From: Convolutriloba macropyga
Lineage: Eukaryota
Direction: 5' to 3'
Assembly (NCBI RefSeq): GCF_964194025.1
Contig: NC_134475.1
Coordinates: forward strand, 25,420,001 to 25,484,000
Length of the DNA: 64,000 nucleotides
Shown here in pieces: positions 34,762 to 57,500 of the stretch. A model generated the notes under the pieces. It made no database searches. It saw only the letters and a list, made by a program, of their open reading frames with translations, and was not told where the DNA came from. Position numbers and translations under genes: made by a program. Within the stretch, counting starts at the first letter, position 1. Every line of letters begins with the position of its first letter.

Positions 34762-34903
34762 NNNNNNNNNNNNNNNNNNNNNNNNNNNNNNNNNNNNNNN
34801 NNNNNNNNNNNNNNNNNNNNNNNNNNNNNNNNNNNNNNNNNNNNNNNNNNNNNNNNNNNNNNNNNNNNNNNNNNNNNNNNNNNNNNNNNNNNNNNNNNNN
34901 NNN
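34762..34903. other. Assembly gap (142 N)
   Basis: Run of n. Confidence 1.
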
Positions 34904-37900: not shown

Positions 37901-39363
37901 TGTTTCCCAGTACTAAGCTGATCAAGCCGAGAGCTGGATACGGAACCCTAAATAGCGGTCAGAAATCGAAGCACGACCATATCTGATCCTCGAAGGATGA
38001 ACGGATGATCGGGGTGGCTTAAGACAATTCGAAAAAAGAGATGGAGCAGACTGATGATCGTGCGGAGATGGTGCTGGAAGAGGAGACCTCTAGATGCGAG
38101 GTGGCTGTCTAGTGATGAGATGGGAGGACATCCCTTCAAGCATGGAAGAAAAGAAGATTTTAAGAAAGTACAGTCGGTTTCATAATCTTCAGCATGATAG
38201 CTTTTTCTCCTTTTGGTGTCTAATCTTGTGTTTCAGATTGGTTTCTGTGTCTAACCATTGGTCATTAAAGTGCTAAACTTAGTCTGAAATATTGGTTAAT
38301 TGTGTTAAGTTTGTGTTTGTGGCGAAATAACTGCTTGGTATTTTTATCCAAACTGTAACCGGTAGAGGGTGTGTAAAGTATCAGTGGTTAAACACAGAAA
38401 CTTGATTTGTGAGTATTGTGCAGAGTAAGCTATTTGCATATAACTTACCTTGAAATTATATTAGAAAGGTGAGTTGAACCAATTTATTTGAATTGATTAT
38501 TACTAAAACGTTCAAATAGAAATTTTGGCGAGGTGAACGGGTTAAGTGCTGAAGAGATTCGATGGATTCACTAGCCAGTTGTTGGGTAGATATAGCGTAT
38601 CAAAAAGTGGTTTTGAGTTTTCTCTTTACTAGTTGTTATATGTGTTGTATCTATAAACAGAGACAAGTTTCTAATTTGCGTAATCCTTCTAGTAGTTTTA
38701 GCCATTATTGTTGATTTGGATTCATATGCTGTAAATTTGGTAAGTTTTCTAGAGTAATACGTTGATGTACTATTACAAATCATTGGTAGATAGCAATGGT
38801 CCACAATTAGTCTACTAGGCGTAGCAAAAATGCATAAGTCTCTTGTGATGTGTCGTGGAACTAATAAAGAAAAGGTAAGGCATGCTTGACGCAAAATCTA
38901 CTGGTAAGGGAGACTAGATGAATCAACGAGACGAGCAGAACCTTTTTTTTCTAAGGTTGCCTAAGATTTAGGTCAATTGCCAGATTTAGTAAATATTTGG
39001 GAGAATAATAACATAGAAGGGAGGAATGTAGAATATTGGAAATCCTACTTTTCTCACAGAAGTGTCGCAATTGGAAATTGTATAAAATTAATTTGGAAAA
39101 ATGGTTTCCTACAAAATGTTAGTGTGGCTTTCGGCTTGCAATTGAATGTCATTTGGCCAACCAGAAATTTGTGGAACAAAAGTGTAGATCTTAGAAGATG
39201 AATGGGTCGAAAATTTATTTTCGGAGGGGGACCAAGTTTATGGAAGTTATCAATCGATATTTATCTCAGTGTGGTCAAAATTGGTGGGGAATTAGTACAA
39301 ACTTGGGGCAAATTCCATTGTTGTCATTTTTGGGGAATTTGTTTCATAGGTACCGCCGGGGGC

Positions 39364-40170
39364 TTTAAACTTCCAAATAAGGCTTAAATTCTTTAGTTTA
39401 TAAGTTGACCGACTGACTAATTGGTAGCGTCATAAGTCTGTTAATGCTTTTGTTTTAGTTTGAATAGCTTGAGAAGAAGTCAGCATTTTAGAAAGAAGGC
39501 GGTCAGGTAGTTCAATCGTTATTTTGTTGCCATAACAAACGTTACGTAAGAAAGGCATAACTAATGCAGTCCATAATGCGAAGTGAACAAATTCTTTCGT
39601 TTGGGCACTCTGGTACGTTTTTGCTTGATAAGTTACAAAGGAATAGAGCAACAACACTAATAAACAGTACCATAATAAGAGCTGTAGCTTAGGAGTTGAT
39701 CTTAAGAGAAATTGTGATAACAAAAACATTGTTTAGGTAGTTGAACTGACTTGATAAATTCAGAACACTGGTTTGCACGATTGGAAATCAGAACATTTGA
39801 GAACACCGGAGAACCACAGTTAGATCAAGTGACTTAATTGATAGGTTGTAGAATTGAGAGAATAGTAGCTCTTTGTTTGTGAGTTTAGTTACAAAGTTAA
39901 AATTGCGAACTTTCTCTTATAATAAGACTCTAGTTGATTTTTGATTATATTTTGTAATCTTTTACATTTCTTGTTCACTATTTAAAAAGTTACTCGAATC
40001 AATTCATTATCGCAACTAGAGTTTCTTACAGCCAACAAGAGCCATGTGGGGACAAAAGAACCCTCCAACAGAAGTCTGAGAGCCATCAAAACAACCCTCT
40101 CAATTTGTTAGATTTTCGGGCGCTAGTCGGTCCACAGCTAGTCAGCCTAAGCAAAGTACAAAATTCTACA
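39364..40170 (+). repeat. BEL-type LTR copy 2
   Basis: Homologous to 33306-34114; ends AAATTCTACA; start mutated to TTTAAA. Confidence 0.85.
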
Positions 40171-40489
40171 GCTGGTTGATAAGATTTCCAAAATTTGTTA
40201 TCGCAAGAGAACGGCAACGATTCAGATGTACAAAGCTTAGTTAAGAGATAGAATTCCAACTAGAAAGAAATACACGAAATGAAACAAAAAATTCAACTGT
40301 ACAATTTAACAAAACCAAAGTAAGTCGATACGCATCTGCTACATCAAATCGAAAATGTATATTTACTCAGATGTAGAATTTTGTAGATACGACTGCAGAT
40401 ATGTAAAAAATCGTTTTAAATTTACTTGAAGGAATGATTTTAGTGATTTGCATTTTATTTTCGGCTTTTCTTTTTAGCATTTTGTATTG

Positions 40490-40536
40490 TTTATAACCTG
40501 ACGATGAATTCAGAGTTCGAAAACGTTTGTAAGAAA
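40490..40536 (+). ncRNA. Minimal type I hammerhead ribozyme motif, copy 1
   Basis: CTGACGA-T-GAATT(CAG)AGTTC-GAAA-ACGTT-T: both core boxes, 5-bp stem II, palindromic AACGTT stem III, weak stem I; lies in a Penelope pseudo-LTR. Confidence 0.78.
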
Positions 40537-41750
40537 GTTTTAAATTGACAAGTTTTAAATCTTGATCAAATCTGTCAATTCAATAAGCCGAAGCCCAGGA
40601 AGAGGCAAGTTGCGTTTTCTATGTCAATTTAGCTAGATCAACCTGAAATATTTACAGATTGAAGAAAGGTGGCAAATTCTGGCGGCAAGTTCGCTTTTCC
40701 ATGATTAAAGCCAAAAAACAGCAATCATCGAAATCTGTTACTCCTGTCAGTGACGGCTATTCCGTGTCTTTATTTCAACTCAAATTCCAGAAACGCCAAA
40801 AATAACATAAGAAACGCCTGGGACAGGGGTCACAGGAAAAACCGGAATGATTTCTTGATTTGGCAAGACACTTTGAACAACTCCATCACCCCTCACAAAC
40901 GAACAAACGACAACAGGCCGTGTGATGTAAAGGAGTTTTTTACAATGTCATTCGGACAGAATCAAGGCGGTATTTTAATCTCAAACGTATGGCGCAAAAA
41001 TATTTTAGAACAGCTTTTAAAATCGGGAATTTTAGTGATCTAGTTAAACAAGCATTTCGTGTCAATACGGAAGCAAAAGAACACCAATATCATCAGCAGA
41101 TACTTCCAACTCAGGTCCCCAAAATTGAGCTTAAATCACTTGGGTTAGGGTTAAAACATCAATGTAATCTACGGAAATTTGATTTGTGATCTTATTATGT
41201 AATTTTTTTATTTTGTAATCATTTACATTTCTTGTTCACTATTTAAAAAGTTACTCGAATCAATTCATTATCGCAACTAGAGTTTCTTACAGCCAACAAG
41301 AGCCATGTGGGGACAAAAGAACCCTCCAACAGAAGTCTGAGAGCCATCAAAACAACCCTCTCAATTTGTTAGATTTTCGGGCGCTAGTCGGTCCACAGCT
41401 AGTCAGCCTAAGCAAAGTACAAAAATCTACAGCTGGTTGATAAGATTTCCAAAATTTGTTATCGCAAGAGAACGGCAACGATTCAGATGTACAAAGCTTA
41501 GTTAAGAGATAGAATTCCAACTAGAAAGAAATACACGAAATGAAACAAAAAATTCAACTGTACAATTTAACAAAACCAAAGTAAGTCGATATGCATCTGC
41601 TACATCAAATCGAAAATGTATATTTACTCAGATGTAGAATTTTGTAGATACGACTGCAGATATGTAAAAAATCGTTTTAAATTTACTTGAAGGAATGATT
41701 TTAGTGATTTGCATTTTATTTTCGGCTTTTCTTTTTAGCATTTTGTATTG

Positions 41751-41797
41751 TTTATAACCTGACGATGAATTCAGAGTTCGAAAACGTTTGTAAGAAA
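41751..41797 (+). ncRNA. Minimal hammerhead ribozyme motif, copy 2
   Basis: Identical to copy 1; CTGACGA at 41759-41765. Confidence 0.78.
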
Positions 41798-43102
41798 GTT
41801 TTAAATTGACAAGTTTTAAATCTTGATCAAATCTGTCAATTCAATAAGCCGAAGCCCAGGAAGAGGCAAGTTGCGTTTTCTATGTCAATTTAGCTAGATC
41901 AACCTGAAATATTTACAGATTGAAGAAAGGTGGCAAATTCTGGCGGCAGGTTCGCTTTTCCATGATTGAAGCCAAAAAACAGCAATCATCAAAATCTGTT
42001 ACTCCTGTCAGTGACGGCCATTCCGTGTCTTTATTTCAACTCAAATTCCAGAAACGCCAAAAATAACATAAGAAACGCCTGGGACAGGGGTCACCGAAAA
42101 AACCGGAATGATTTCTTGATTTGGCACGACACTTTGAACAACTCCATCACCCCTCACACACGAACAAACGACAACAGGCCGTGTGATGTAGAGGAGTTTT
42201 TTACAATGTCATTCGGACAGAATCAAGGCGGTATTTTAATCTCAAACGTATGGCGCAAAAATATTTTAGAACAGCTTTTAAAATTGGGAATTTTAGTGAT
42301 CTAGTTAAACAAGCATTTCGTGTCAATACGGAAGCAAAAGAACACCAATATCATCAGCAGATACCTCCAACTCAGGTCCCCAAAATTGAGCCTAAATCAC
42401 TTGGGTTAGGGTTAAAACATCAATGTAATCTACGGAAATTGTCGAAAAAGAACAGGGGAAAAAAACTGAGCAAAAATCAACGGAAGGCAACGAGAAAACG
42501 AATGATCAGTGGTAAGTGATAGCATCTCTTGGTGTTTTCTCACCGGAGATCTTTCACAAATCTTCAGCTATGCTTAAACTGCCGAGATGTTGGTTAAGAA
42601 CAATTCTGCAAAGAAAGACTGTTGGGAACCATACTGCGACTATGAAAGGTTTTTTCTAAGGTTGCCTAAGATTTAGGTCAATTGCCAGATATAGCTTTTA
42701 TTTTGAAGAATAATAACATAGAAGGGAGGAATGAAGAATTTTGGAAATCATCCTTTTCTCACAAAAGTGTCGCAATTGGAAATTGTATAAAATTAATTTC
42801 GAAGATCGGTTTCCTACAAATTGTCATTTGGCCAACCAGAAATTTGTGGAACAAAAAGTCATTTTGGCCAACCAAATAATGTCATTTGGCCAACCAGAAA
42901 TTTGTGGAACAAAAAGTGAAGATCTTAGAAGTTGAATGGGTTGAAAATTGATTTTCGGAGGGGGTCCAAATTTATGGAAGTTAGTTATCAATCGATATTT
43001 AACTCAGTGTGGTCAAAATTGATGGGGAATTAGGACAAACTTGGGGCAAATTCCATTGTTGTCACCTTTGGGGAATTTGTTTCATATGTACCGCCGGGAG
43101 GC

Positions 43103-43914
43103 TTTAAACTTCCAAATAAGGCTTAAAATCTTTAAATCATAGTTTGACCGATTGACTAATTGGTAGCGTCATAAGTCTGTAACTGCTTTTGTTTTAGTTT
43201 GAATAGCTTGAGAAGAAGTCAGCATTTTAGAAAGAAGGCGGTCGGGTGGTTCAATTGTTCTTTTGTTGCCATAACAAACGTTACGTAAGAAAGGCATAAC
43301 TAATGCAGTCCATAATGCGAAGTGAACAAATTCTTTCGTTTTGGCCACTCTCATACGTTTTTGCTTGATAAGTTACAAAGGAATAGAGCAACAAGATTAA
43401 TAAACAGCACCATAATAATAGCTGTAGTTTAGGAATAGATCTTAAGAGAAATTGTGATAACAAAATCATTGTTTAGTTAGTTGAACTGACTTGATAAATT
43501 CAGAACACTGGTTTGCGCGATTGGAAATCAGAAAGAACACTTGAGAACACCCGAGAACCGCAGTTTGATCAAGCGAATTAATTCATAGGTTGTAGAATTG
43601 AGAGAATTGTAGCTCTTTGTTTGCAAGTTTAGTTACAAATTTAAAATTGCGAACCTTCTCTCATAATGAGACCCTAGTTGATTTTTGATTTAATTTTGTG
43701 ATCTTTTACATTTCTTGTTCACTATTTAAAAAGTTACTCGAATCAATTCTTTATTGCAACTAGAGTTTCCTACAGCCGACAAGAGCCATGTGGGGACAAA
43801 AGAACCCTCCAACAGAAGTCTGAGAGCCATCAAAACAACCCTCTCAATTTGTTAGATTTTTGGGCGCTAGTCGGTCCACAGCTAGTCAGCCTAAGCAAAG
43901 TACAAAATTCTACA
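43103..43914 (+). repeat. BEL-type LTR, third full copy
   Basis: Homologous to 39364-40170; ends AAATTCTACA. Confidence 0.85.
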
Positions 43915-44264
43915 GCTGGTTGATAAGATTTCCAAAATTTGTTATCGCAAGAGAACGGCAACGTTTCAGATGTACAAAGCTTAGTTAGGAGATAGAATTA
44001 CAACTTGAAAGAAAGACACGGCACGAAACAAAAATTTCAACTGTACAATTTAACAAAACCAAAGTAAGTTTCAGTTAATTTTTTAAGGTTTTTATCATGT
44101 CGATATGCATCTGCTACTTCAAATCGAAAATGTATATTTACTCAGTTGTAGAATTGTGTAGATACGACTGCCGATATGTGAAAAATTGTTTTAAATTTAC
44201 TTGAAGGTATGATTTTAGTGATTTGCATTTTATTTTCGGCTGTTCTTTTTAGCATTTTGTATTG

Positions 44265-44311
44265 TTTATAACCTGATGATGAATTCAGAGTTCGAAAACG
44301 TTTGTAAGAAA
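44265..44311 (+). ncRNA. Minimal hammerhead ribozyme motif, copy 3
   Basis: CTGATGA (44273-44279)-T-GAATT(CAG)AGTTC-GAAA-ACGTT-T. Confidence 0.8.
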
Positions 44312-44395
44312 GTTTTAAATTGACAAGTTTTAAATCTTGATCAAATCTGTCAATTCAATAAACCGAAGCCCAGGAAGAGGCAAGTTGCGTTTTCT

Positions 44396-45037
44396 ATGTC
44401 AATTTAGCTAGATCAACATGAAATATTTACAGATTGAAGAATGGTGGCAAATTCTGGCGGCAAGTTCGCTTTTCCATGCATTAAAGCCAAAAAACAGCAA
44501 ACATCACAATCCGTTACTCCTGTCATTGATGGCCATTCCGTGTCTTTCGTTCAACTCAAATTCCAGAAACGCCAAAAATAACATAAGAAACGCCTGGGAC
44601 AGGGGTCACCGGAAAAACTGGAATGATTTCTTGATTTGGAACGACACTTTGAGTAACTCCATCACCCCTCACAAACTAACAAACGACAACAGGCCGTGCA
44701 ATGTAGAGGAGTTTTTTACAATGTCATTCGGACAGAATCAAGGCAGTATTTTAATTTCAAACATATGGCGCAAAGAATATTTTAGAACAGCTTTTAAAAT
44801 CGGGAACTTTAGTGATCTAGTTAAAGAAGCATTTCGTGTCAATACGGAAGCAAAAGAACACCAATATCATCAGCAGATACCTCCAACTCAGGTCCCCAAA
44901 ATTGAGCTTAAATCACTTGGGTTAGGGTTAAATCATCAATGAAATCTACGGAAATTGTTGAAAAAGAACAGGGGAAAAAGAAAACTGAGCAAAAATCAAC
45001 GGAAGGCACGGAGAAAACGAATGCTCAGTGGTAAGTG
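44396..45037 (+). pseudogene. Upstream accessory ORF (~210 aa) of the Penelope-like element; possible degenerate SGNH-fold protein with basic C-terminal tail
   Basis: 174-aa ORF 44418-44942 plus frameshifted tail KKNRGKKLSKNQRKARRKR; homologous copies at 40621-41180 and 41882-42519; motifs ILAASS, AIPCLSF, IW(H/N/Q)DTL(N/S)NS. Confidence 0.55.
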
Positions 45038-45088
45038 ATAGCATCTCTTGTTGTTTGCTCACCGGAGATCTTTCACAAACCTTCAGCT

Positions 45089-47640
45089 ATGCTTAAACTG
45101 CCGAGATGTTGGTTAAGAACAATTCTGCAAAAAAAAGACTGTTGGGAACCATACTTCGACTATGAAAACAATGTTTGTAAGTTTGAAAGTATTAGATGCA
45201 GAATAAATTTTCTTAAAACTTGCCTTAGCACAGATGAAATACGGGATTTTTTTAGAATTTCGTGTTCCAAAAACATGTTTTGTCGGATCAAGCAGTGTAT
45301 AGTTTTCAACTAAAATTGCTAAGGTCGGAAATTTCCACAGCAGCTGACACACACCATAAATGTGACCAAAAGCGAGCTTCTAGTCGAAAAAATCACCTTA
45401 AGAATTTAGATAACCACCTATTGCCCTCCGTAATTTTTAAATTGCGCAACCGAGTTTCCAACCATGTAGTTAATTCTGAACAAAGACTGCGGGGAAAACT
45501 TGCCAAACTTCCGGAAAAGGAAAACAAGCTACTCAGATTATCTAATGGAAGACTGTAGTGGTTCTCGATAATATCATTTTGCCGGGATTCGTCAGGGATA
45601 TTCTCGCTTTTGGTTCAAAGCATCCAACAAGGGACAAGTGTAAAGAGTTGCATTTCTTGGCGGACATAGCAGTTTGATAAGAAATCTGAGTGAGAACAAC
45701 GTACCAGGTGAAAAAATGTTCGAGATTGAACTCGCAGCAAATTGGTAAGCAAAACAGAGAAACACCTTTAGATAGAGCAATAGCAAAGGTGCCAAAATAT
45801 CTGCGTGACAACGCCATGATTGCTGTTGCTTTTGATTAGGCTGATGGGTTTTCTCTTATAAAAAGGAGCTCGTTTGCTGAAAAACTGAAAAAAAAGTATT
45901 GGACTGCGAACAGTTCAGAAAAGAGTTGTGATAAAATCGTAATGAAAAATGAAAAAAAAACTAAACAAAGATTTTTGGATATGAGGGAAAAAAGATACCG
46001 GATCACAACCAGCAAGGTTGTATGAACTAGCTAAAGTACACAAAAATAAACCCTTCCGGGACCTTTTCTCTCTATCCCGAGAAGTTGTTAGCATGAACTT
46101 AACAATTTTATAACACCCTTTTTCCAAAAGATTGAAGGAGCAAACACGGAAATTAACACCAATGACGCACGAAAAACTTTTGGGCAAAAAAACTTGAAAA
46201 AGACGAACAAATCCTATCATTAGATTTAAAAAATTTCGTCCATCAATGCTCCCGTAAAGGAAGCTATTAACATTACCCTGCAATTGTTTTATGCTAGGGA
46301 CGATAAACAAGACATACCTAGAACAACAATAAAACGTCTGCTCGAACTAGCCGTCACAAATGTTCATTTTAAATGCAATGAAAGTTGGTACTGTCAGAAA
46401 AACGAGTTGGCAATGCTCGCGTCCTTGGCAGTAATTTTTCCTAACCTTTGTATGAACTCGTGGGGCTACAATAGAATCTAAGGACACCTATAGTTAATCC
46501 AACACACAATTTAGCACTTGCCGCAATTGCGAACACCGTGTGACAGCACGTTCCAGGGGTGTTGAGTGTGACCTTTGCAGTAGATGGTTCCACGCTAAAT
46601 GTCAGCATATCAGTAACACAGAATATGATAGCATGGAAAACCAGTTCTGGATGTGCTTATTCTGCCGTGAAAATGATGAAATTAACATTAACACTGAGAA
46701 AAACCAAATTTTTTCAAAGATATGTCGACGTTATTGTGAGTACAGTTAGAGCTGACACAAAAAAGCTGTTAGTTGCGGTCAGTAGCCTCCATCCAAATCT
46801 TAAGTTGGCATTAGAAACAACGGATGACAAAAACAGTTTGGCATTTCTGGACATGTCAATTAACGTAAAACCGGAGGGGACAAATTTTTGCACTTGGTAT
46901 CAAAAACCATCAGAGACTGGAAAAATTCCGAACTTTTGTATCTGTGCACCCCTTCAACATAAGAAAAACATTATACAGGGAGCAATACACCACCTGTTCC
47001 GAGCCACCAGCAATTTGGAAGCGTTCCATGAAGAATTTACAAAAATGAAGAAATTTGTGATTGTAATCAATATTCTAGGCGTTGGATAGTGAATATTGTC
47101 AAGGACATAATTAACCAATTGCGAATGAAAGAACAATGAAAAGGATTTAACGCGGTTGTAGCCGTAAAACAGCAGAAAAATACTGAGGAACAATAATTTG
47201 CATGACACTACAGAGGCAACATCTCTAATGACTTTGTTAGGAAGCTGAACAAAATTCGTCCCGTACAGACGATTTTCACCTATCGGAAACTTAATAGCTG
47301 TTTACCTAGCCTCAAGTCTAACTTTGATAAGGATCTCAAATCTCACGTGGTTTTTGAACTCATTTGTAATGGATGCAAATCCGTCTACGTAGGGCAGACT
47401 TGCTGACATATTACCACAAGGGTTGCAGAGCATGCCAAGGCGGACTCAACGGTGGAAATACATGCAATTGAGTTCAACGGTGAAAAAACAGCTTTCAAGT
47501 GGAAGATATTAGACCAGTGCGGCAACCAATCTAAGTTAATGACAATAGAGTCGCTCTATATTAGAATACTAAAACCAGCCATCAACACTCGCAACAAATA
47601 CCGAACACGAGAACACACTGAAAGCTTAGTTTGGAGATAA
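45089..47640 (+). pseudogene. Penelope RT-(PHD)-GIY-YIG ORF, frameshifted
   Basis: Begins MLKLPRCWLRTILQKK; RT motifs; PHD at 46519-46665; GIY-YIG at ~47340-47610. Confidence 0.9.
46519..46665 (+). other. PHD finger (C4HC3) inside the RT domain
   Basis: CRNC-x11-CDLC-x4-HAKC-x16-W-x-CLFC; all eight ligands and the PHD tryptophan present. Confidence 0.88.
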
Positions 47641-47903
47641 AGTTCCAACTTGAAAGAAAGACACGATATGAAACGAAAATTTCAATTGTACAAAGTAAAC
47701 CAAAGTAAGTTTAAGGTAATTTATGAAGGTTTTTAAATACAAAAACATGTTGATATGCATCTGCTACATCAAATCGAAAATGTATTTTGACTCAGATGTA
47801 AAATTTTGAAGATACGACTGTAGATATGTAAAAATTCGTTTTAAATTTCCTTGATTGAATGGTTTTAGTGATTTGCATTTTATTTTTGTAGCATTTTGTA
47901 TTT

Positions 47904-47950
47904 TGTAAAACCTGACGATGAATTCCGAGTTCGAAAACAATTGTAAGAAA
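47904..47950 (+). ncRNA. Hammerhead motif, copy 4 (stem III mutated)
   Basis: CTGACGA-T-GAATT(CCG)AGTTC-GAAA-ACAAT-T. Confidence 0.6.
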
Positions 47951-48397
47951 GTTTTAAATTGGCAGTCCTTTTTTAAATCTTGAATGATATTGTTGCCAGC
48001 AGCAGCAATCAGAACTCCAGGTTGAACATACAAACGTCCAGCAGTCAAATTGGCGCCAAAATCAATACCTGAATATATTTGAGCCAAAAACAGTGCCAGT
48101 GACATTCGCGACGATGGGTTATTGGTGCAAATAAGAACCTGACAAACTGTTCCCTTTAAACTTTTTCAATTATTTTTATGTCATTAATATCTTTTTCGTT
48201 GTACTTGAACATAACAGGATTCCTAATGATGCTAAAATACACAGCATAGGTAAAATTTTGGCCTATTTTAGTTTTTGGCGTGTTGAAGTTCATCTTTTTT
48301 GAACTTTTGGTAATTCTGGTGCAAAAGTACTCATTTGGGAATGAAAACTACTCTATGTTCGTCACCATGGCCGTCACCACGGCCGACACCATTTCCA

Positions 48398-50033
48398 TCA
48401 CCAACGTCCATTGCAAATGCAAGAAAATTTGGTACTGTCAGAAAGACGGGTTGGCAATGGGTGCGTTCTTGGCGGTGATTTTGGCAAACTTTTGGATGAA
48501 ATCGTGGGAGCCACAACTGAAATTACAGACAAATAAATGTAAAAACAAAACACAATCTAGCACTTATCGCAATTTCGCACACCGTGTGACAGCACGTGCC
48601 AGGGGTGTTGAGTGTGAAGTTTGTAATAGATGGTTCCACGCAAAATGTCAGCAAATCAGTAACACAGAAAATGATAGCTTGGAAAACCACTTCTGGATAT
48701 GATCATTCTATCGAGAAAATGATCAGGTTGACATTAACCATTCGTCCGAAACTAACGTTTTTCTAAGATTTGTCGACGATATTGTGAGAACAGTTAGAGC
48801 TGACACAAAAGAGCTGTTAGATGCGGTCAATAACCTCCATCCAAATCTCCAATTTACATTAGGAACAACAGATGACAAAAACAGTTTGCCATTTTTTGAC
48901 ATGTCAATTAACGTACAACCGGAGGGGAACACTTTTTGCACATGGTATCAGATACTGGAACAATTCTGAACTATCGTAGCTGTGCAACCCTACAACATAA
49001 GAAAAGCATAATACAGGGAACAATACACCGCCTGTTCCGAGCCACCAGCATTTGGGAAGCGTTCCACGAAGCATCGACAAAAAATGAAAAAATTTGGGAA
49101 CTTAATCAATATCCTAGGCATTGGGTAGTGAATGTCGTCAAGGATACAATTAACCAGCTGCAAATGAAAAAACAAAGAAAAGGACATAGATATAACGCGG
49201 GTGTAGCCGTAAAACAACAGGAAAATACTGAGAAACAACAATTTGTATTACAATACAGCGGCAACATCTCTAATGAATTTGTATAGAAATTGAACAAAAT
49301 TCATCCTGCACAGACGATTTTCACCTATCGGAAACTTAATAGCTGTTTACCTACCCTCAAGTCTAACTTTGAAAAGGATCTCAAATCCCACGTGGTTTTT
49401 GAACTCATTTGGAATGGATGCAAATCTATCTATGCAGGGCAGACATGCCAACATATTACCACAAGGGTTGCAGAGCATGCCAAGTCGGACTCAACGATGG
49501 GGGTACATGCAATGGAATGCAACGTTGAGAAAGCAGCTTTCCAGTGGAAGATATTAGACCAATGCAGCAACCAATCTAATTTAATGACACTAGAGGCGCT
49601 CTATATAAGAACATTGAAACCAGTCATCAACACGCGCAACGAATACCGAAGACGAAAATTGACACTTAAATTGGAGATGAAAATCGAACTTAAAAGGCAC
49701 GTTAAGAAACGAAAATTTCAACTTTACAATTGAACAAAACTGGAGTAAGTTTAAAGCAATATATGTAGGTTTTTAAATAAAAGAACATGTCGATATGCAT
49801 CTGCTACATCAAATCAAAATTTTTTTTTTTACTCAGATGTAAATATTTTGTAGATACGATTGTAGATATGTAAAAATTCGTTTTAAATTTCCTTGAATGA
49901 TTGATTTTAGTGATTTGCTTTTATTTTCTGGCTTTTCAATTTAGCATTTTGTATTGTTTATAACCCGAAGATGAACTCAGAGTTCGAAAACGTTCGTAAG
50001 AAAGTTTTAAATTGACAATTTTTTTTTAAATCT
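48398..50033 (+). mobile_element. 5'-truncated Penelope-like element, second diverged copy, also with an in-RT PHD remnant
   Basis: KDGLAMGAFLAVILANFWM..GVECEVCNRWFHAKCQQI..FW..RFVDDIVR..LHPNLQFTL; GIY-YIG ORF 49290-49733; 3' pseudo-LTR. Confidence 0.92.
49957..50003 (+). ncRNA. Hammerhead motif, copy 5 (U4C variant, perfect stem II, UC cleavage site)
   Basis: CCGAAGA-T-GAACT(CAG)AGTTC-GAAA-ACGTT-C. Confidence 0.65.
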
Positions 50034-50483
50034 TACTCTATGTTCATTTTAAATCTTATGTGCGAGAACCATTATGAAGTGCATATGAGAAAGCTGGTCA
50101 CCGATTAACCCAACCTTGTCTAAAGCCACCAGGTTTTATTTCGCAGATGCTAAATGTTGCGAAAACTTGAGATCTTAAACTGATAGCTTATTCAATGAAC
50201 TATTGCGTTAATCAAAACATCTGTGATGTAATAATTTATCATTAGTCATAAAAGTTGCTGATATTGAGATTATAGCCACTTTCAATGTTAATATTCCCCA
50301 TGAGGTAGTTGTTTAGGAACATAATGGTCTTGAACTCTTTCCCCAATTATATCAATATTGGTCTTATAGAATCTGAACTTCCAGTACCCATTTAAAATGA
50401 AAAAATTTTTGGTTACGCACGCCCAAGTGGTCGTAAATGTCACCCCATTTACAGTTATTTTCAGATTATTTATTAGTTTTCGA

Positions 50484-50520
<37 letters not shown>

Positions 50521-50521
50521 G
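50484..50521. repeat. (TTG/CAA)n microsatellite, near the 3' end of a CR1-like fragment
   Basis: About 12 perfect units. Confidence 0.95.
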
Positions 50522-50579
50522 GGGATTTTCTTTACAGAAGGGATTTCTCCCAATTAAAACAGTTATAGAAAATTGGTCC

Positions 50580-51640
50580 ATGTCTCTCTGCAGTGTTGAC
50601 AGTCACATGCAGACGTTTTCTGGTTTGTACCGCATCATGATATCATTCCAAATTTGCTTTAGAATTCTGTGTTTTGGGCCGTCTTGATTTCCGAAGTCAA
50701 TGCCGTGATGAAATCTGTTTGCTATCCTTTGTGTACGAAAGATGAATTCGCCGCGAGATTTTTCGATTTGTTTTTTCGTTAAGTCAAAGTAATCGTTTCT
50801 TCTCATTGATCTGTTTCCAGGCAGCACCGGCTGTTTTGTATTTGTCGGTTGAATTTGTTGAAGACTTGATAGTAGTAGAAGATCATTGTGCTGATAGTAC
50901 ATTGGCAAGGGTAGTAGATTTGACAAACCTAGTTGTTCGATGTAACTCAGTGTCTTGCTATTTGTTATCCAGGACGATTATTCGTTGAAATCGTTCTAAG
51001 TTTCTCATATCTCCTCGGTTTAAGTTACAGCACGAGGAACCGTACATTAGAACTGGCAGAATCATCGAAGTCCCAGTTTGATGCGCATATTTACTTTATT
51101 TGCTACGTTTCTTATCAGGGAATAGAAGACTCGGTTAGTTTTCTTCATTATTTCCTCTAAGTGGATTTTTTAAGTCAAATAGTATTGTATCCGAATCCCT
51201 AAGTCCTTTACACCCGCTGAGGTTTGGAGGAGACCTCCACTCAGGTAGAAGTGGCTTTCCTTTCCTTTGAACAAAACTTTAGCGCGTTTTTCAAAAGCTA
51301 GACCCATTTTTTTCGGGTGACTCAGTCTTCCAGTGCGTCGAGGTTACTCTGTACTTGGTCTGCTGGTGTTCCAATTTGGAGTATTTTTAGGTCATCCGCG
51401 AATATAAAGGGTTCGCCAAATCTGAGGGCATCTGGCAGGTCGTTGGTGTATATGCAAAAAAAAGATCGGCCCGAACAGTGATCTCTGTTGGACACCACTT
51501 GTCACTGGTAAATACTTCGATTTGATGTTCTCCACTCGGACAAATTGTTCTCGTCCGTTGGGATAGTCATATAAGACTTCAAGGAGACAACCTCCAGTGC
51601 CAGTTTGCCCTGCTTTCAGTTGAAGTTCGTAGTGGGGTAC
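50580..51640 (-). mobile_element. 5'-truncated CR1-like LINE fragment
   Basis: GREQFVRVENIKSKYLPVTSGVQQRSLFGPIFF, (F)ADDLK, LLPLPMYYQHNDLLLL, RGEFIFRTQRIAN. Confidence 0.8.
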
Positions 51641-51659
51641 ACGATATATATCATTGGGG

Positions 51660-51900
51660 ACCACGATATATATCATTGAGTTCAGCCCAGTTCCTGTCGT
51701 GTCTTCTTTTGAAGATGTTTAGACTAAGACAGGACGTAACCTCTTCTTTCAGATTGTTCCAATCTTTAGCCGCTCGCACAGTGAAGCAGTTCCGTCTGCT
51801 TTCGGCTCTTGCTTTTTTCGACACCACCTTCTTCTGATTTCCTCTAGAGATTCTGGCGTTAGGGTCAAACAATCTGTCACTTGCCCTGATAACTGGATAA
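51660..51900 (-). mobile_element. Extreme 3' fragment of a different CR1 LINE
   Basis: RGNQKK..RRNCFTVRAAKDWNNLKEEVTSCLSLNIFKRRHD, the typical CR1 ORF2 C-terminus. Confidence 0.75.
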
Positions 51901-52397
51901 CTGTGTGGATCAAATGTGACGGCTAAAATATCTCGACTTTTTGACTTTGCTTTACACCGGTCTAAAATAGTCGAGAATACATATATCATATCACGATTTG
52001 AAAAAACTCGATTTTTGATCTTGTTACTACTTCAAAGAGTCAAAAATGTGTTAACAGAGCTTCAAAATAGACAGAGCACCGAAACACTTTTAATACTTCG
52101 AATGAAGTTAGAAAATTTAACTTAGAAGGGAACAAACTACAATAGCATATAGACAAAATGTATGTGAGGTTTAATCAGAACAGTTACAGAAAGGTCGAGA
52201 ACAGTATTTACAAAAATGGTGGAAAAAATTAGTTCAATCGGTACCAGTTAAGAAATTGAACGAATTTAAAAAGGAGATGAGAGAAGTTCGGGTACAGCGA
52301 AGGGTTTGCTTTAAAACCAACAATCAACTTAAAGTGAGATAAAAATTATCACAACGTAAAACAAATCTAAAAGAAAATCAAATAAAGGAGTATCAAC

Positions 52398-55358
52398 TTA
52401 AAAGCCTCCCTTCCTCGACAACCGCCCCCATGGAAGCCCGACCGGCTTCAGTCGACGGAGCGAGCGGTAACCGCGCAGGCAGAGTACGGAGCTCCGGAGT
52501 AGCGCAAAGCTGATTTTCGTTCGGATAAACGTGATGATGTTGGCGTAGGAGTCGTCGTTCTTAAGGCTCAGTTTGCTGGCAACTTGCTTTATCACCCAAG
52601 TTGCTGAAGGTCCTGCTCCTCTTGAGCAAGAAAAAATCAACGGACTGAGAGTGCCCTTCTCAACATTTATAACTCGAGGCTCGTATTTCAATTTTTTGAT
52701 ATTTTCATGGTAGCTATACGCGTCTTCGATATTTTTCGTGCAGCTTTGGCAAAGGGGTTGAAGATTTTTACATCGAAAAACGTTTTTGTAAATCTGCTGT
52801 CCCAGAGACCATTGGCTTTAATATCCAATCGTGCGTCATCTTCAGTGCTGGTAGTTGTATTTGCAAAGGACTCACCTTGCAACGGCAGAAGATTAGGCTC
52901 GATTTCAACGTCAAAACAAATTTCCTCAAGCAGATTGTCGAAAGAGTCACGGATGTCGTTATGTCTTTAGTGGGTATACCCGCCTCTGGGACAGGAAAGG
53001 GCATGGGCATCTGTGATTGGCTAGCCACAAACACAGTTGGTCGCAAATTTGGGGTGCTCCCAACCATACCGAAGAGCAATACCATCTCGGAATTAAGACT
53101 CGGATAGATTGAAGTTATACTTTTTCATTGGCATGGCATTAAGCCAACATGAAGCCCCTTTTTTAGAGGCTAGATCGATTGCATACATTTTGTTTGCATT
53201 CAAGCAGTTTTTAATGCTGGATTTTTCCTCAATCATTTTCTGTGATTTATCTTTTCTGATCTTCTCAACTCTTTTTAATTGTTCGGACTCGATGTTTGAT
53301 ACGTCCCCGAGGAATAGCGGCTCTGAAATGGTTTTCGAACGTTTGTATTCGAGAATTCTATCTTCAGGGCGAATGATGTTGAGTTCACCTTCGCGTACGG
53401 GGAGTGAAAATATGTCGCGATAGGTTTCGTCATAATTTGTAATACATACAAGGTTAGGGATGAGGTGATCATTGATAATTTTCTCGGCTTCTTCCAACAA
53501 GTCGAACGTTGTCCTCGATAAGAAGGTTAATTTATGCTGCACAGAGTTCGTCATGCATTTGAACACATTTTGAGGTGCAATTTTCGCGTGTTTGGCTAAT
53601 TTTTGCTTTATACGTAGATAGTTTTGCTTTTGATCTTCTATGTATTGTCTGCAGGAGTCCACGTTTCCCATAACAGATCCAAGAACTCTTGATCCATCAA
53701 TAATATCTACTTCTCCACCTTTAAACACGTTTTTTGCGTCATTGACGAACTCTGCTTTGGTGATAAGATAGCATTTGATAACATTATAACCGAATGAAGG
53801 ACCATGCAGTTCCAACTTCGATAGAAGGACTTTCAGCACTTCGACCGATCCGCGGGGTTTCTGTCATCCGCGTACCATTTTTAAATCAGGTTGTCGTCGG
53901 AAACCTTTTCGATGAGGGGCAAAATAGCTAGTCCATACATTGCCATTGCAAGTGGGTCGCCTTGAGTAGTTCCCTCTCGGGATTGCAGAACTTTGTGAGA
54001 AACATAGGGATTAGATGGGGTCTCATAAGAACTGGATAAAGCCAGATAAAGAGATGGACAAAGAACTTCGATGTTTTTAGGGCTAAGTCTCTGTTCAAAC
54101 TGTTGAAGGCATTTTTCGCATCAATAAGGAGGATGGCCTGTGTCTCCGGTTGCCCGAAGGTCTCAAGTAGAGAGTGAAAGGCATGTTCAATGCCGCATCT
54201 TTGACCAGGACAAAGTTGGAGATTACCTCCGAGGAATTTGAGGTCATTTTTGACGCACGCAACAATGGCCCTACCAATGATGCGTCGCATTACCTCACCA
54301 ACGCCTATGGGCCGTACACCAGGGCATGACTTGCAAATGTCGTTTGACGTAGATTTGAACGATGTAAGGATGCGTCTCCATTCATTTGCATCTAATCCTG
54401 AGGGACCACGGCTGCCGTGTGTCTTCATGGCCGATCTACGTATTGCAGATGCGTTGATGCGATCAAATATAGAGTGGTGATAGGGTAATGTATTTAAATG
54501 GGGGTCTTTCACAACGTAGTCAAGGTTTGCAGTCTATGGGGCGGGATGCTTTTCAACTAATATGTCCATTACTGTTTTCGTTCTTAGTTTTTGATTTAGG
54601 GGTAAGACACCGCCCTTCGGTTCTTCGGTTAGACATCTTAGTGCATTCGAGACTTTTCCAGTTTCCATGTTTTTGTCGACTAGTTTGAATTAATTTGTTT
54701 CATGTTTATACTTCGATTTTGTAAGTCTGTCTTGTAGTCCTTTCGCTTCTAGAAATAATAATTCAAATTCGCAATGTATCCAGAGGTCGAGTCGCCTAGC
54801 TATGATTTTACCTACTGATCAATCGTTGCCCTTTTTTGTTCTAGCGAGGATGAGATGGGGCATGACCATGGCGGCTAACATCCCAGCTTCACTATTATGG
54901 TTAATAGTCTCACATTGTGACAATGCAACGCTGAGTGAAGCGACAATGCGATAGCCAACTTTATTTTTGCTTAAAATGAAAAAGACGGGTTTCCAATGAA
55001 CAATTTCTTGGTAAACGTTTTTGAGCGTTTCTTTCTTACCGGTGGTTAGATTGGACCAGAAGGCGGTAGCAGTGAGAGAATTAGGCGTATGGGGGGCAGG
55101 GGTTTGGGTGACATGGGTATGGGATACATGGGTATGGGAATCTGCGTTGTTTGCATTCGTGATTGCTGATGTGTCGGTGATTAACGCCTCGTGTGTGCGT
55201 GCGCTGGGGCAGTTTTCGCATTCGAAGTTGTCATGGTGTTCGCGCGCAAATCGAAGTCCGCTACATTGGACATGCATATAGGTACCGCATGAGTAACACC
55301 ATATACCCCTCTTCTTGAGGGGTTTGAGACACTTCGAGCAGTGCGTCTGCTCGGACAT
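52398..55358 (-). pseudogene. CRE-type ORF2: PHD - RT - zinc knuckle - RLE (frameshifted)
   Basis: ORF pieces 54819-55358, 53928-54512, 53093-53839, 52688-52882, 52398-52691; PHD CSKC..CYSC..HVQC..FECENC at 55209-55340. Confidence 0.88.
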
Positions 55359-55414
55359 GGGAACGGTTTGTCGAGGAAGGGAGGATAAATTGGTGAATTA
55401 GTTGATGAAAACTA

Positions 55415-55994
55415 TTAAGAATGAAGTATAGATGAGAATACTCGATTACCAATATGAGAAAAATGAACACCATCACGGCAAAACATGAAAGGCGATAGGT
55501 TAAAAGAGGGCGAGATAACATGAGGGAAACAGTAATGTAGCAATTTATAAATCGCGCAATTTTTCAAATATTGCTTATGGTTTATCAAACGATTGATTTT
55601 TGATGGGATGATTTTGGGGGCTATCAGGACTGATGGGTTGAATTTGTATCTAATAAGTTCAATTAGGAGTCTATAACATTCAATGAAATGAAAATTTTCT
55701 GTAGAATGATCATTGAAGCCATAAATTAGCGTCACGGCGAAAATTTAGAGGGTAGTATTGTTGCACAACATCAATGAGGTCCCGTATATTTGCACCGCGA
55801 AAAGAGTGTATTGTTGCGCCGATATCACTGCCCTTAATGTATTTCGTCCTTGAGGTTCCGGGCACAAGGTTCTTGACGTCCCAAGGGAGAAGGGGAGCTG
55901 TGAAGCGGGGTCGCATGGAGGGCCGAGTTGTTCCTGTTCTCCGAACACTCGGGTGATAGGGACATACAATGCTTGCCTCTAAAATTCTCTCCAC
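55415..55994 (-). pseudogene. SGNH/GDSL esterase-like ORF1 (~190 aa, one frameshift near 55740)
   Basis: Block I LVPGTS, block II SFRGA, block III YGFND, block V RDGVHFS..G in the correct order and spacing. Confidence 0.85.
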
Positions 55995-56315
55995 GGAGAG
56001 ACCATTCTTGCAAGACTTAGCATATCAAATCTATTTAATAAGTTTATCCCAACAATTAGTCTAAAATAGTCGAGGAAAGAGGACTGCAAGTGAACCGCTA
56101 GTACTGTAAGCTGGCCGTCCCCTGTTTGGCGGTCGTCCGTTTATTTTAACAATGTATCGATAACGCAAAGGAAAAGGAATGAATACCAATTTGTGCGCCA
56201 AAAATTTTGCCTATGCTCAATATTTTATTGCTCTTAATACTTCCTATTGTGCCGTCTTAGACTTGATCATTAGATTTAATTAGATCCGAATACCCGAACT
56301 ACTAAGCTCCAGTAG

Positions 56316-57098
56316 AAACCTCTTAATATATATCGTTGAAGCCGTATGGGCTACGGAAGTCTCACCTCTAAAGAATGACCCATTAGGAAAATTTGTGGCA
56401 ACCATGACCGCACAGGTCTTGTGGAACCTGAACTCAAATAGGCAGCGGTAAAGCAACCGAAGCCGGCGATTGTTTCATCAATTTCCGGAGTTGACTTAAG
56501 AAATTTTTCTGGACCGTCCTAATCACCTCCTACATTGAGTTCTAACCAAACCCAAATTTTGCTCGGTGTCTTAAGCTCAATTCTGTTCTCAAGTTAAAAC
56601 TGTTCTGGTCTTTCACCAGATTTAGCTAACGAAATCAAGCCTTAAACACTTCTCAATGACAATTGGACAAACTTTGTGGTTTCTACTAAGAAGTCACACC
56701 CACATAAGAAGTTGGAACAAACAGCAGCTACAGCTATTATTTCACAAGAAAATTAAATGGCGCCTCTATCCTCGCCGATCTCCAAATTTTGTTGAAGTAT
56801 GAGATAGACTAGTTTGGAGTTGCAAAATATTGATGATTGCGGTACTTATTGAACAGACTTTCAATACAAAACCACTGACACCCGCAAGCAACGGCTCTCA
56901 AAATTTTGAGTGTCTTACGCCTAAAAGTTTTTTTTTAGACGAGTGAATATACCAGCTCCATTTATACCATCAGCAGAGAAGTTTGCACATTTTCGAAAAT
57001 CATACAAAATGGCTCAATGCTAATTTGATCTGGCTGTGACGGTCAAAAGAGCGTCTATCCAAAAAGAAACTATCGGGGGAAGTGAAACAAAAAAGATC
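56316..57098 (+). repeat. Second copy of the 32184-33032 segment (conserved head + BEL integrase remnant)
   Basis: AAACCTCTTAATATATATCGTTGAAGCC... through GAAACAAAAAAGATC shared with the first copy. Confidence 0.9.
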
Positions 57099-57112
57099 GG
57101 ACTGTATTCTGT

Positions 57113-57500
57113 TCACGCTATTGGCCACATTACCAGCAACTTTAGAGATTTAGCATAAAATTTTTTCGATTTGTGTAGAATCGAACGAACAGCCAGTTGT
57201 TGAACTTTTTTCTGTCCACGCATAGAAGTTAGTGAGGGACACCATGAGAAAGATATGCAGAGCCGCACTGATAATACTAGAGAGATAAAAAGTTGCTTTT
57301 TTCGTAGGAAAGAAAGGCTAACCGGTATATTTCGCTTTAAGAAATTAAAAACGGTGTTCCAATTCCGTAGTTTTGCATGTCTAGATATGGCAGTCACATG
57401 AAACATTTGAGCAAACTTCAACACTAAATCACGAGGATTTGTAATAGTATTCAAGGGGTTGCCGTTTATGTCCCAAAGCGGTCGTTTATTAATAATGGAA
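57113..57500 (-). mobile_element. Degraded CR1-like LINE fragment
   Basis: RDLVL, VFNFLKRNIP, KKQLFISLVLS, WCPS, YAKSLKLL remnants of the post-RT region. Confidence 0.55.

What the first reader, a model, noticed from the sequence alone, without database searches (positions are those of the whole stretch)
46380..46760. PHD finger inserted inside the catalytic RT domain of a Penelope-like element
Seen: between RT motif B' (ELAMLASLAVIFPNLCM) and the catalytic motif (QRYVDVI) lies a complete C4HC3 PHD finger, TCRNCEHRVTARSRGVECDLCSRWFHAKCQHISNTEYDSMENQFWMCLFC (46519-46665). The diverged second copy has the same insert at the same place (KDGLAMGAFLAVILANFWM...GVECEVCNRWFHAKC...RFVDDI), so it is a family trait and not a one-off insertion. 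Established: this B'-C interval is normally short in Penelope RTs, and PHD fingers are often histone H3 tail readers that usually sit in ORF1 or at protein termini of retroelements. Inference: a chromatin-reading module grafted onto the RT palm could steer target-primed insertion. I cannot confirm whether this exact position has been reported; PHDs are known as accessory domains in some other retroelement clades.
Basis: partly seen in the sequence, partly recalled or inferred. Interest (0 to 1): 0.9.

Follow-up and report, generated by a model that had tools for sequence, protein, structure and literature searches.

The report
PHD finger inside Penelope-like reverse transcriptase
Two dead copies of a Penelope-like jumping gene lie here; their family, still intact elsewhere in this animal genome, carries a conserved PHD zinc finger (a module that usually reads histone tails) looped into the middle of its reverse transcriptase, a placement I could not find described for animal elements and whose function is untested.

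Summary
Window 46519-46665 encodes a complete C4HC3 PHD finger (Pfam PF00628, 28.1 bits). It lies between RT motif 4(B) (46404-46454) and motif 5(C) (46715-46735) of a Penelope-like element with a C-terminal GIY-YIG endonuclease.

Both window copies are dead. In copy 1 the three pieces sit in three frames. Copy 2 has lost 4 of its 8 zinc ligands.

The genome also holds natural intact copies with RT, PHD and endonuclease in one frame: two 885-codon frames of this family, and 13 869-codon frames of a second family; the two copies of that family compared are 99% identical.

In 38 other PLE RTs the B-to-C interval is 28-35 aa. In 15 PHD-bearing RTs it is 95-116 aa. These 15 form one supported group on an RT tree built without the insert. 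The PHD core is conserved (40% identity, fixed length) and its two linkers are not (13-15%).

The predicted fold matches histone-tail-reading PHDs (Pygopus, TM about 0.85). The nearest sequence relatives are tandem PHDs of other transposons.

Histone reading that steers integration is plausible but untested. A PHD inside a PLE RT is already published for algal Chlamys elements, at another position, so this is a new variant of a known kind. The scan flagged the same trait in 35 other notes on this genome.

The parts
45035..47640 (+). Copy 1: decayed full-length ORF2 (RT-PHD-GIY-YIG) of the Penelope-like element
   Evidence: tblastn of the natural intact 885-aa ORF (L004) covers aa 1-882 in pieces on all three frames, 55-81% identity; stops and frameshifts are visible
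46404..46454 (+). Copy 1, RT motif 4(B)
   Evidence: aligns to the invariant Q-x-x-G-x-A-M-G block of 54 PLE RTs
46519..46665 (+). Copy 1, PHD finger, first to eighth zinc ligand, all eight present
   Evidence: Pfam PF00628 28.1 bits, E 2e-6; coordinates
46715..46735 (+). Copy 1, RT motif 5(C) remnant QRYVDVI (second catalytic Asp replaced)
   Evidence: intact copies read RYVDDI
47347..47589 (+). Copy 1, GIY-YIG endonuclease core with the internal C-x2-C of the CCHH motif
   Evidence: Pfam PF01541 on the intact homologue
48391..49733 (+). Copy 2: 5'-truncated copy (equivalent to aa 455-885), 80-85% identical to the intact ORF
   Evidence: tblastn; direct repeats D6, D8, D9, D11, D12 at about 2,045-bp spacing from copy 1
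48445..48498 (+). Copy 2, RT motif 4(B)
48565..48702 (+). Copy 2, PHD remnant in frame with motif B; 4 of 8 ligand positions lost; ends at a stop where the seventh Cys should be
   Evidence: Pfam PF00628 25.6 bits
48766..48783 (+). Copy 2, RT motif 5(C) RFVDDI
49392..49634 (+). Copy 2, GIY-YIG endonuclease core
   Evidence: Pfam PF01541 24.7 bits on ORF 49290-49733
44418..44942 (+). Upstream ORF1 remnant of copy 1 (174 aa, no Pfam match)
   Evidence: 31% identical, E 7e-18, to the 219-aa ORF1 that precedes the intact ORF2 of the second family (L063 813-1472); no Pfam family
40000..44400 (+). Tandem partial copies / pseudo-LTR array of the same element (1,261-bp period)
   Evidence: direct-repeat families D1-D5 and D7; 5' ORF2 fragment at 42516-42646

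Best explanation
The stretch is the middle of a dead copy of a Penelope-like retrotransposon (PLE). [quoted passage not shown] In this lineage an insert of 67-88 aa sits in the RT loop between the motif 4(B) helix and the motif 5(C) hairpin. The insert is a folded C4HC3 PHD finger of about 50 aa held by two variable linkers. One gain of the insert in the ancestor of the clade is enough to explain its distribution. The clade includes at least two families in this genome, one of them very recently active, and relatives in marine metagenomes and in an acoel-related protein cluster. The finger has been kept under constraint. These points are shown (about 0.95). Inferred (about 0.45): the finger belongs to a PHD subtype that other transposons (Helitron-like and APE-type non-LTR proteins) carry in tandem. 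It most likely acts as a histone-tail reader, for the H3 N-terminus around K4 with the methylation state unresolved. In that role it would tether the RT-EN ribonucleoprotein to nucleosomes and so bias or assist target-primed reverse transcription. From general RT architecture (my recollection, not measured here) the B-C loop lies on the outer, under side of the palm, so a looped-out domain would not block the catalytic cleft. The confidence given is for the whole statement including the inferred mechanism.
For: Anatomy and family trait:
- Pfam PHD, RVT_1 and GIY-YIG.
- Natural intact ORFs with the PHD in frame: two 885-codon frames and 13 869-codon frames. L063 and L064 are 99.3% identical over 3,760 bp.

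The finger is an insert:
- The Gly(B)-to-Tyr(C) interval is 28-35 aa in 38 PLE RTs and 95-116 aa in 15 carriers.
- One gain is enough: on an RT tree without the insert columns the carriers form one group (SH-aLRT 97), sister (100) to an insert-less group.

Constraint:
- Six zinc ligands and the Trp of the W-[FY]-H motif are invariant in 14 sequences. The first Cys and a second Trp are nearly invariant. The eighth Cys shifts by one position in some members.
- The PHD core has 40% mean pairwise identity and a fixed length of 47-51 aa. The linkers have 13-15% identity and lengths of 21-34 and 9-21 aa.

Fold:
- Full-length AF2 model: pLDDT 88.5, pTM 0.78; PHD 85-89, linkers 58-62. Best PDB neighbours are TERTs.
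- PHD-only model: pLDDT 88.5; TM 0.8-0.86 to Pygopus PHD, then MLL3 PHD6, BPTF, AL1, PHF2 and DIDO. Most of these entries are histone-peptide complexes or known histone-tail readers.
- The sequence search of the PDB gives the same set.

Transposon PHD subtype:
- 39% identity, E about 1e-10, to each of three tandem PHDs of P0239, which also carries DUF6570. My reading of DUF6570 as the Helitron-associated N-terminal domain is from memory.
- Similar PHDs sit in an APE-endonuclease protein, P0269.
Against: No direct evidence of histone binding exists. Aligned to MLL1 PHD3 and AL1, only the Trp of the aromatic cage is invariant. An aromatic residue at the position I take (from memory) for MLL1's second cage tyrosine is present in 7 of 14 members and absent from the window's own family. 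The loop before the third Cys is conserved and basic, which would also suit nucleic-acid binding. The complex prediction of the PHD with the host H3 tail gave no verdict. Within this genome, shared substitutions in the PHD core show less third-position bias (12, 5, 11) than in the RT (10, 6, 23 and 10, 12, 22), so constraint on the finger is weaker than on the RT. No model coordinates were available, so the placement relative to the active site is not measured. No insertion-site survey was possible.
Confidence: 0.45

Rival explanations
1. The finger is functional but is not a histone reader. It would bind nucleic acid (the element's RNA template or the target DNA) or another protein (ORF1p, a second RT-EN molecule or a host factor), and serve RNP assembly or processivity.
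For: The segment R-x-V-[TS]-x-R-[GS]-x-[GS] before the third Cys is conserved and basic. The methyl-lysine cage is incomplete. The best structural neighbour, the Pygopus PHD, is solved in complex with BCL9/Legless HD1 as well as with a methylated H3 tail. MLL3/MLL4 PHD6, also near neighbours, bind H4 and not H3. The element has a conserved ORF1 of unknown function that could be a partner.
Against: The nearest solved relatives, by sequence and by fold, are mostly histone-tail readers. The invariant Trp sits at the position that, as I recall, walls the K4 pocket in those readers. The same PHD subtype is used by mechanistically unrelated transposons (Helitron-like, APE non-LTR). That fits a shared host target such as chromatin better than element-specific RNA or protein partners.
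Confidence: 0.3
2. The finger is a structural or nearly neutral passenger: a captured zinc module that the RT tolerates in a surface loop and that has no ligand of its own.
For: It sits in a loop with floppy linkers. Within-genome shared substitutions show little third-position bias in the core. One relative (P0019) has lost the first Cys.
Against: Ligands and two Trp residues are kept across sequences that are only 31-52% identical in this region. Core length is fixed while both linkers drift freely. Every intact, recently active copy retains it. None of the 15 sampled members of the clade lacks the insert.
Confidence: 0.1
3. The PHD-coding segment is an optional retained intron (exitron), so the working RT lacks the finger.
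For: In-frame GT...AG pairs that would remove 198-219 nt exist in both families. No RNA run was found to check.
Against: The candidate sites differ between the families, and two of the three candidate acceptors lack a polypyrimidine tract. Conservation at the protein level of ligands and fold-defining residues across the clade shows that the segment is translated.
Confidence: 0.05
4. The finger is a one-off nested insertion or an assembly chimera limited to this locus.
For: None beyond the decayed state of the two window copies.
Against: There are more than 2,100 first-look candidates for the motif B + PHD segment in the genome. Two families have intact ORFs. Relatives occur in independent ENA assemblies and in a Tara Oceans contig.
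Confidence: 0.01

Closest known systems
Penelope/Poseidon-type EN+ Penelope-like elements (Arkhipova 2006; Craig et al. 2021, PMC8557442)
   Same: DKG motif upstream of the RT. TERT-like RT. Thumb (Pfam HTH_animal). C-terminal GIY-YIG endonuclease with an internal CCHH motif. No CX2-5CxxC finger in the RT-EN linker. Partial tandem / pseudo-LTR insertions.
   Different: An insert of 67-88 aa containing a PHD finger lies between RT4(B) and RT5(C). A conserved upstream ORF1 is present. Rfam finds no hammerhead ribozyme. Placement among labelled reference clades was not tested.
Chlamys PLEs of Chlamydomonas with PHD insertions (Craig et al. 2021, PMC8557442)
   Same: A PLE whose polyprotein has a PHD finger inserted inside a catalytic domain, including inside the RT.
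   Different: Chlamys elements have an N-terminal endonuclease without CCHH and are algal. Their PHD lies between RT2a and RT3(A) or inside the EN. Here the EN is C-terminal with CCHH, the host is an animal, and the PHD lies between RT4(B) and RT5(C). This is therefore an independent acquisition.
PHD fingers of other transposons (CR1 non-LTR ORF1, Kapitonov & Jurka 2003; Rehavkus, Dupeyron et al. 2019; both as cited in PMC8557442)
   Same: The PLE finger is 39% identical (E about 1e-10) to tandem PHDs of a DUF6570 (Helitron-like) protein. It aligns with PHDs of an APE-endonuclease protein.
   Different: Those fingers sit at protein N-termini, often in tandem and after 2A-like NPGP peptides, not inside a polymerase domain.
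Histone-reading PHD fingers (Pygopus, BPTF, MLL1 PHD3, Alfin-like 1, PHF2, DIDO)
   Same: C4HC3 ligand spacing, the W-[FY]-H motif, and a predicted fold with TM 0.7-0.86 and rmsd 1.1-2.2 Å.
   Different: Only one of the cage residues is invariant. Ligand binding is untested.

Membership tests
Penelope-like elements, C-terminal EN+ (Penelope/Poseidon type) | TERT-like reverse transcriptase with RT motifs 1-7 and the upstream DKG motif | tested here: met
   Pfam RVT_1 33.5 bits. D270, K271 and the motif A, B and C residues are invariant or nearly so in 54 PLE sequences. The best PDB fold matches are TERTs 6usr, 6zdq and 3du5.
Penelope-like elements, C-terminal EN+ (Penelope/Poseidon type) | C-terminal GIY-YIG endonuclease containing the CCHH motif | tested here: met
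   Pfam PF01541 at aa 791-868 of the intact ORF and in window copy 2. C798, H820 and H830 are nearly invariant. C-x2-C is read directly.
Penelope-like elements, C-terminal EN+ (Penelope/Poseidon type) | No CX2-5CxxC zinc finger in the RT-EN linker (this separates Penelope/Poseidon from Neptune and Nematis; PMC8557442) | tested here: met
   The linker of the intact ORF (about aa 716-790) holds a single Cys.
Penelope-like elements, C-terminal EN+ (Penelope/Poseidon type) | Partial tandem / pseudo-LTR organisation with 5' truncation | tested here: met
   The window holds an array with a 1,261-bp period and a truncated copy 2. In L063 the 3'-terminal 439 bp is repeated upstream of the full unit.
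Penelope-like elements, C-terminal EN+ (Penelope/Poseidon type) | Hammerhead ribozyme motif in the pseudo-LTR | tested here: not met
   Rfam with the permissive E-value threshold found no hammerhead in window 38000-58000 or in L063, L064 and L004. A simple core-pattern scan also found none. Very minimal motifs could escape both searches.
Penelope-like elements, C-terminal EN+ (Penelope/Poseidon type) | Placement inside the named clade on a phylogeny with labelled reference elements | not tested
   No labelled Penelope, Poseidon, Neptune, Nematis or Hydra sequences were available. My tree shows only that the clade and its insert-less sister stand apart from 30 other PLE RTs.
PHD finger (Pfam PF00628) | C4HC3 zinc-ligand pattern with canonical spacing | tested here: met
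   C-x2-C-x12-C-x2-C-x4-H-x2-C-x17-C-x2-C. The ligands are invariant across the clade, except that the first Cys is nearly invariant and the last shifts by one position in some members.
PHD finger (Pfam PF00628) | Profile score above the curated threshold | tested here: met
   28.1 and 25.6 bits for the window copies and 26.8 bits in the family 2 ORF, against a cut-off of 24. The family 1 intact ORF scores 22.2 bits, just below the cut-off.
PHD finger (Pfam PF00628) | PHD fold | tested here: met
   Predicted model with pLDDT 88.5. TM 0.8-0.86 and rmsd 1.1-1.6 Å to Pygopus PHD structures.
Histone H3K4me-reading PHD fingers | Aromatic cage (two to four residues) around the methyl-lysine | tested here: inconclusive
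   The Trp of W-[FY]-H is invariant. A second aromatic residue is present in 7 of 14 members and absent from the window's family. The other cage positions are not aromatic. Residue roles are recalled from the literature.
Histone H3K4me-reading PHD fingers | Binding to the H3 N-terminal tail | not testable with these tools
   The single complex prediction gave no verdict. A biochemical assay is needed.
Chlamys PLEs with PHD insertion | N-terminal GIY-YIG EN without CCHH; PHD between RT2a and RT3(A) or inside the EN | tested here: not met
   Here the EN is C-terminal with CCHH and the PHD lies between RT4(B) and RT5(C).

The most novel reading that the evidence does not exclude
A clade of animal Penelope-like elements has built a histone-mark reader into its polymerase, independently of the algal Chlamys elements. 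Nucleosome-mark recognition would then be physically coupled to target-primed reverse transcription and would decide where these still-active elements land. PHD-in-RT would be a recurrent solution in PLE evolution, drawing on a pool of PHD modules shared among unrelated transposon classes.
Probability: 0.35. Interest if true: 0.65.

Novelty: new variant of a known kind. Interest (0 to 1): 0.5.

Why it matters
How PLEs choose their targets is poorly understood, and only Penelope of Drosophila virilis has been characterised experimentally (PMC8557442). A conserved reader-type domain inside the RT of a recently active family offers a concrete handle: a small, separately folding domain that can be expressed and tested against histone peptides. 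This genome also offers a comparison between two PHD-bearing families, and the related insert-less group offers a control. The finding adds a second, independent case of a PHD inserted into a PLE RT, which suggests that surface loops of this polymerase tolerate accessory domains. It also links the module to a PHD subtype shared by Helitron-like and non-LTR elements. For genome annotation, it explains why gene predictors may report 'PHD-domain proteins' that are really PLE fragments.

Tried and rejected
- Complex prediction of the PHD (aa 500-578) with the host's own H3 tail (aa 2-41) gave no verdict: score 0.28 against a mark of 0.34. It is evidence neither for nor against binding.
- The ESM Atlas feature search with aa 480-600 gave no usable hit.
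- PF27108, seen on the relatives, is not in the local Pfam copy. One search shows it is 'PHD_Pygo', a general PHD model and not a PLE-specific family.
The two sites I did have (L063, L064) show no microsatellite or shared target.
- Two searches for RNA runs found no run on record as RNA, so neither expression nor splicing could be checked.
- Two cluster look-ups for organism names returned one named member only. It is a Symsagittifera roscoffensis fragment that ends before the finger. The window's genome is not that species: the best match is 63% identical.
- A second word-based protein search restricted to the finger found only 3 proteins.
- The idea that the PLE finger shares its origin with the PHD-like finger of the neighbouring non-LTR element (54819-55358, minus strand) is not supported: BLASTP E 2.6.
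- Hammerhead ribozymes were not found.
Natural intact copies made one unnecessary.
Full report
**What is in the window**

In copy 1:
- RT motif 4(B) lies at 46404-46454.
- A complete 49-aa C4HC3 finger lies at 46519-46665.
- The motif 5(C) remnant QRYVDVI lies at 46715-46735.
- These three pieces are in three different frames with stops between them, and the second catalytic Asp is Val. The copy is dead.

In copy 2:
- The copy is 5'-truncated (48391-49733).
- Motif B (48445-48498), the finger remnant (48565-48699) and RFVDDI (48766-48783) are in one frame.
- The first, second and eighth Cys are replaced, and the seventh is a stop codon.

Pfam scores the two fingers 28.1 and 25.6 bits against a gathering score of 24. 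It also finds GIY-YIG in copy 2.

tblastn with a natural intact ORF maps copy 1 to aa 1-882 and copy 2 to aa 455-884. It also finds a 5' fragment at 42516-42646. Upstream lies a tandem array with a 1,261-bp period, the partial-tandem (pseudo-LTR) arrangement typical of PLEs.

**The finger is in frame in intact copies**

A six-frame search of the window's own genome (1.18 Gb) used the motif B + PHD segment as query.
- It gave 2,126 first-look candidates. All 150 scored had E <= 1e-24.
- Two loci (L004, L009) hold an uninterrupted 885-codon frame that reads motif B, finger, RYVDDI, thumb and GIY-YIG.
- Pfam finds RVT_1 at aa 351-503, PHD at 513-561 and GIY-YIG at 791-868.

A search with the motif A-B segment alone found a second family, 74% identical in that segment.
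- It has 13 loci with 869-codon open frames.
- One of them (L063) has a 219-aa ORF1, then an 868-aa ORF2 with the PHD at 26.8 bits.
- Two copies are 99.3% identical over a 3,760-bp unit that is preceded by a 439-bp pseudo-LTR, so this family was active very recently.

I built no consensus.

**It is an insert, one gain explains it, and it is kept**

The large protein collection returned about 23 relatives that cover the whole region and many PLE RTs that align only on either side of it.

Size of the insert (54-sequence alignment):
- The distance from the invariant Gly of motif B to the Tyr of YxDD is 28-35 aa in 38 PLE RTs.
- It is 95-116 aa in the 15 carriers.
- One further sequence was an obvious duplication artefact.
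- The residues flanking the insert (K-x-[FWY]-E after motif B, K-[LIV]-F before RYVDD) are shared with the insert-less relatives. The finger and its linkers therefore replace about three residues of a short loop.

Phylogeny:
- A maximum-likelihood tree of the RT, made without the insert columns, places all 15 carriers on one side of a branch (SH-aLRT 97).
- They are sister (support 100) to a group of eight insert-less RTs. One change of state suffices.

Constraint within the carriers:
- Six zinc ligands and the Trp of W-[FY]-H are invariant. The first Cys and a second Trp are nearly invariant. The last Cys is C-x2-C in one subgroup and C-x-C in another.
- Mean pairwise identity is 0.40 in the core, whose length is 47-51 aa.
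- It is 0.15 and 0.13 in the two linkers, whose lengths are 21-34 and 9-21 aa.
- It is 0.66 and 0.49 in the motif B and motif C blocks.

Among 45 distinct genomic copies, singleton substitutions are flat across codon positions, as expected for neutral decay. Shared substitutions favour third positions in the RT (10, 6, 23 and 10, 12, 22) but hardly in the finger (12, 5, 11). The finger therefore evolves faster than the RT core, while its fold-defining residues are held.

**Structure**

The AF2 model of the intact ORF is confident (pLDDT 88.5, pTM 0.78).
- The motif B helix is at 480-491.
- The finger (about 510-560) has pLDDT 85-89.
- Both linkers dip to about 60.
- The motif C hairpin is at 578-590.
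- The best PDB matches are TERTs, then group II intron RT, in line with the known kinship of PLEs and telomerase.

The finger modelled alone has pLDDT 88.5.
- It superposes on Pygopus PHD structures at TM 0.8-0.86 and rmsd 1.1-1.6 Å.
- Next come MLL3 PHD6, BPTF, AL1, PHF2, DIDO, MLL1 PHD3 and TAF3. Most of these entries are histone-peptide complexes or known histone-tail readers.
- The sequence search of the PDB gives the same set.

From general RT architecture (my recollection) the loop between the motif B helix and the first motif C strand is on the outer, under side of the palm, far from the catalytic turn.

**Where the finger comes from**

An exhaustive profile search of 1.84 billion representatives used the motif B-PHD-motif C profile.
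- It gave 262 hits at E <= 1e-10.
- By my count, roughly 60 of the best 150 span motif B and the finger contiguously. Most are fragments.
- Other strong hits match the finger alone, several times per protein.
- These include P0239 and P0252, which have a 2A-like ...NPGP peptide followed by three tandem PHDs. P0239 continues into DUF6570, which I recall as the Helitron-associated N-terminal domain.
- They also include P0269, which has a 2A-like peptide, PHDs and then an APE-type endonuclease.
- The PLE finger is 39% identical (E about 1e-10) to each P0239 repeat and aligns with them throughout.

The finger thus belongs to a PHD subtype that circulates among unrelated transposon classes. By contrast, the PHD-like finger of the neighbouring non-LTR element in this window shows no similarity.

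**Function**

- Shown: the domain is real, folded, looped out on flexible tethers, kept in active copies and conserved across a diverse clade.
- Inferred: it reads a histone tail and so tethers the RT-EN particle to chromatin. Its closest solved relatives by sequence and by fold are nearly all histone-tail readers. The Trp that, as I recall, walls the K4 pocket in those readers is invariant. Unrelated transposons use the same subtype, which points to a common host target.
- Against: the rest of the cage is not conserved, a basic loop is conserved, and nothing here tests binding. The one complex prediction gave no verdict.

**Comparison with what is known**

By the criteria quoted in Craig et al. 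2021 (PMC8557442) the element has the features of C-terminal EN+ PLEs of the Penelope/Poseidon type:
- the DKG motif;
- CCHH inside the GIY-YIG domain;
- no CX2-5CxxC finger in the linker;
- pseudo-LTR tandems.

Rfam found no hammerhead ribozyme, and I had no labelled references for a clade assignment.

The same paper reports PHD insertions in five Chlamys families of Chlamydomonas, between RT2a and RT3(A) or inside the EN. It notes PHDs in CR1 and Rehavkus elements. Full-text searches for PLE plus PHD found no other report. Two other hits matched only 'PhD' in their funding statements.

Among named NCBI/UniRef proteins returned by the search, none carries the insert. The only named cluster member is a Symsagittifera roscoffensis fragment that stops before the finger. 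The host of this window is not that species. One relative comes from a Tara Oceans marine metagenome contig.

**Verdict**

This is a new variant of a known kind: a PLE with a PHD accessory domain, at a new position and in a new host group. It is moderately interesting.

The scan has flagged the same trait in 35 other notes on this genome, and one earlier follow-up reached the same reading.

Noticed in passing
window 44418-44942 (+); L063 813-1472: This PLE clade has a conserved upstream ORF1 (174-219 aa; 31% identity, E 7e-18, between the two families) that matches no Pfam family. In L063, ORF1 ends 4 nt before the ORF2 start.
   Followed up: partly
window 38000-58000; L063, L064: Rfam at a permissive threshold and a simple CUGAUGA...GAAA scan found no hammerhead ribozyme in the pseudo-LTRs, although canonical EN+ PLEs usually have one and another first-stage note claims five minimal motifs here.
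   Followed up: partly
window 52700-55800 (-): A decayed non-LTR-type retroelement lies on the minus strand. Its 179-aa ORF (54819-55358) starts with a PHD-like C-x2-C...C-x2-C...H-x2-C...C-x2-C finger (Pfam sub-threshold). That finger shows no sequence similarity to the PLE finger (BLASTP E 2.6).
   Followed up: partly
P0239, P0252, P0269 (database proteins): Transposon proteins begin with a 2A-like self-cleaving peptide motif (D-[IV]-E/H-x-NPGP) followed by two or three tandem PHD fingers of the same subtype. They then continue into DUF6570 (Helitron-like) or an APE endonuclease.
   Followed up: partly
G000 C1:61917500-61923500 (L063) and 12 further loci: A second PHD-bearing PLE family has 13 open 869-codon frames, and two of its copies are 99.3% identical. 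It appears to have been mobile very recently in this genome.
   Followed up: partly
window 40000-44400: Head-to-tail partial PLE units repeat every 1,261 bp at 95-100% identity, upstream of copy 1.
   Followed up: no
G000 C12:11363000-11416000: A tandem histone gene cluster (H3 copies a few kb apart) came up while I fetched the host H3 for the complex test.
   Followed up: no
window 34762-34903: A run of 142 N (assembly gap or mask), left untouched.
   Followed up: no
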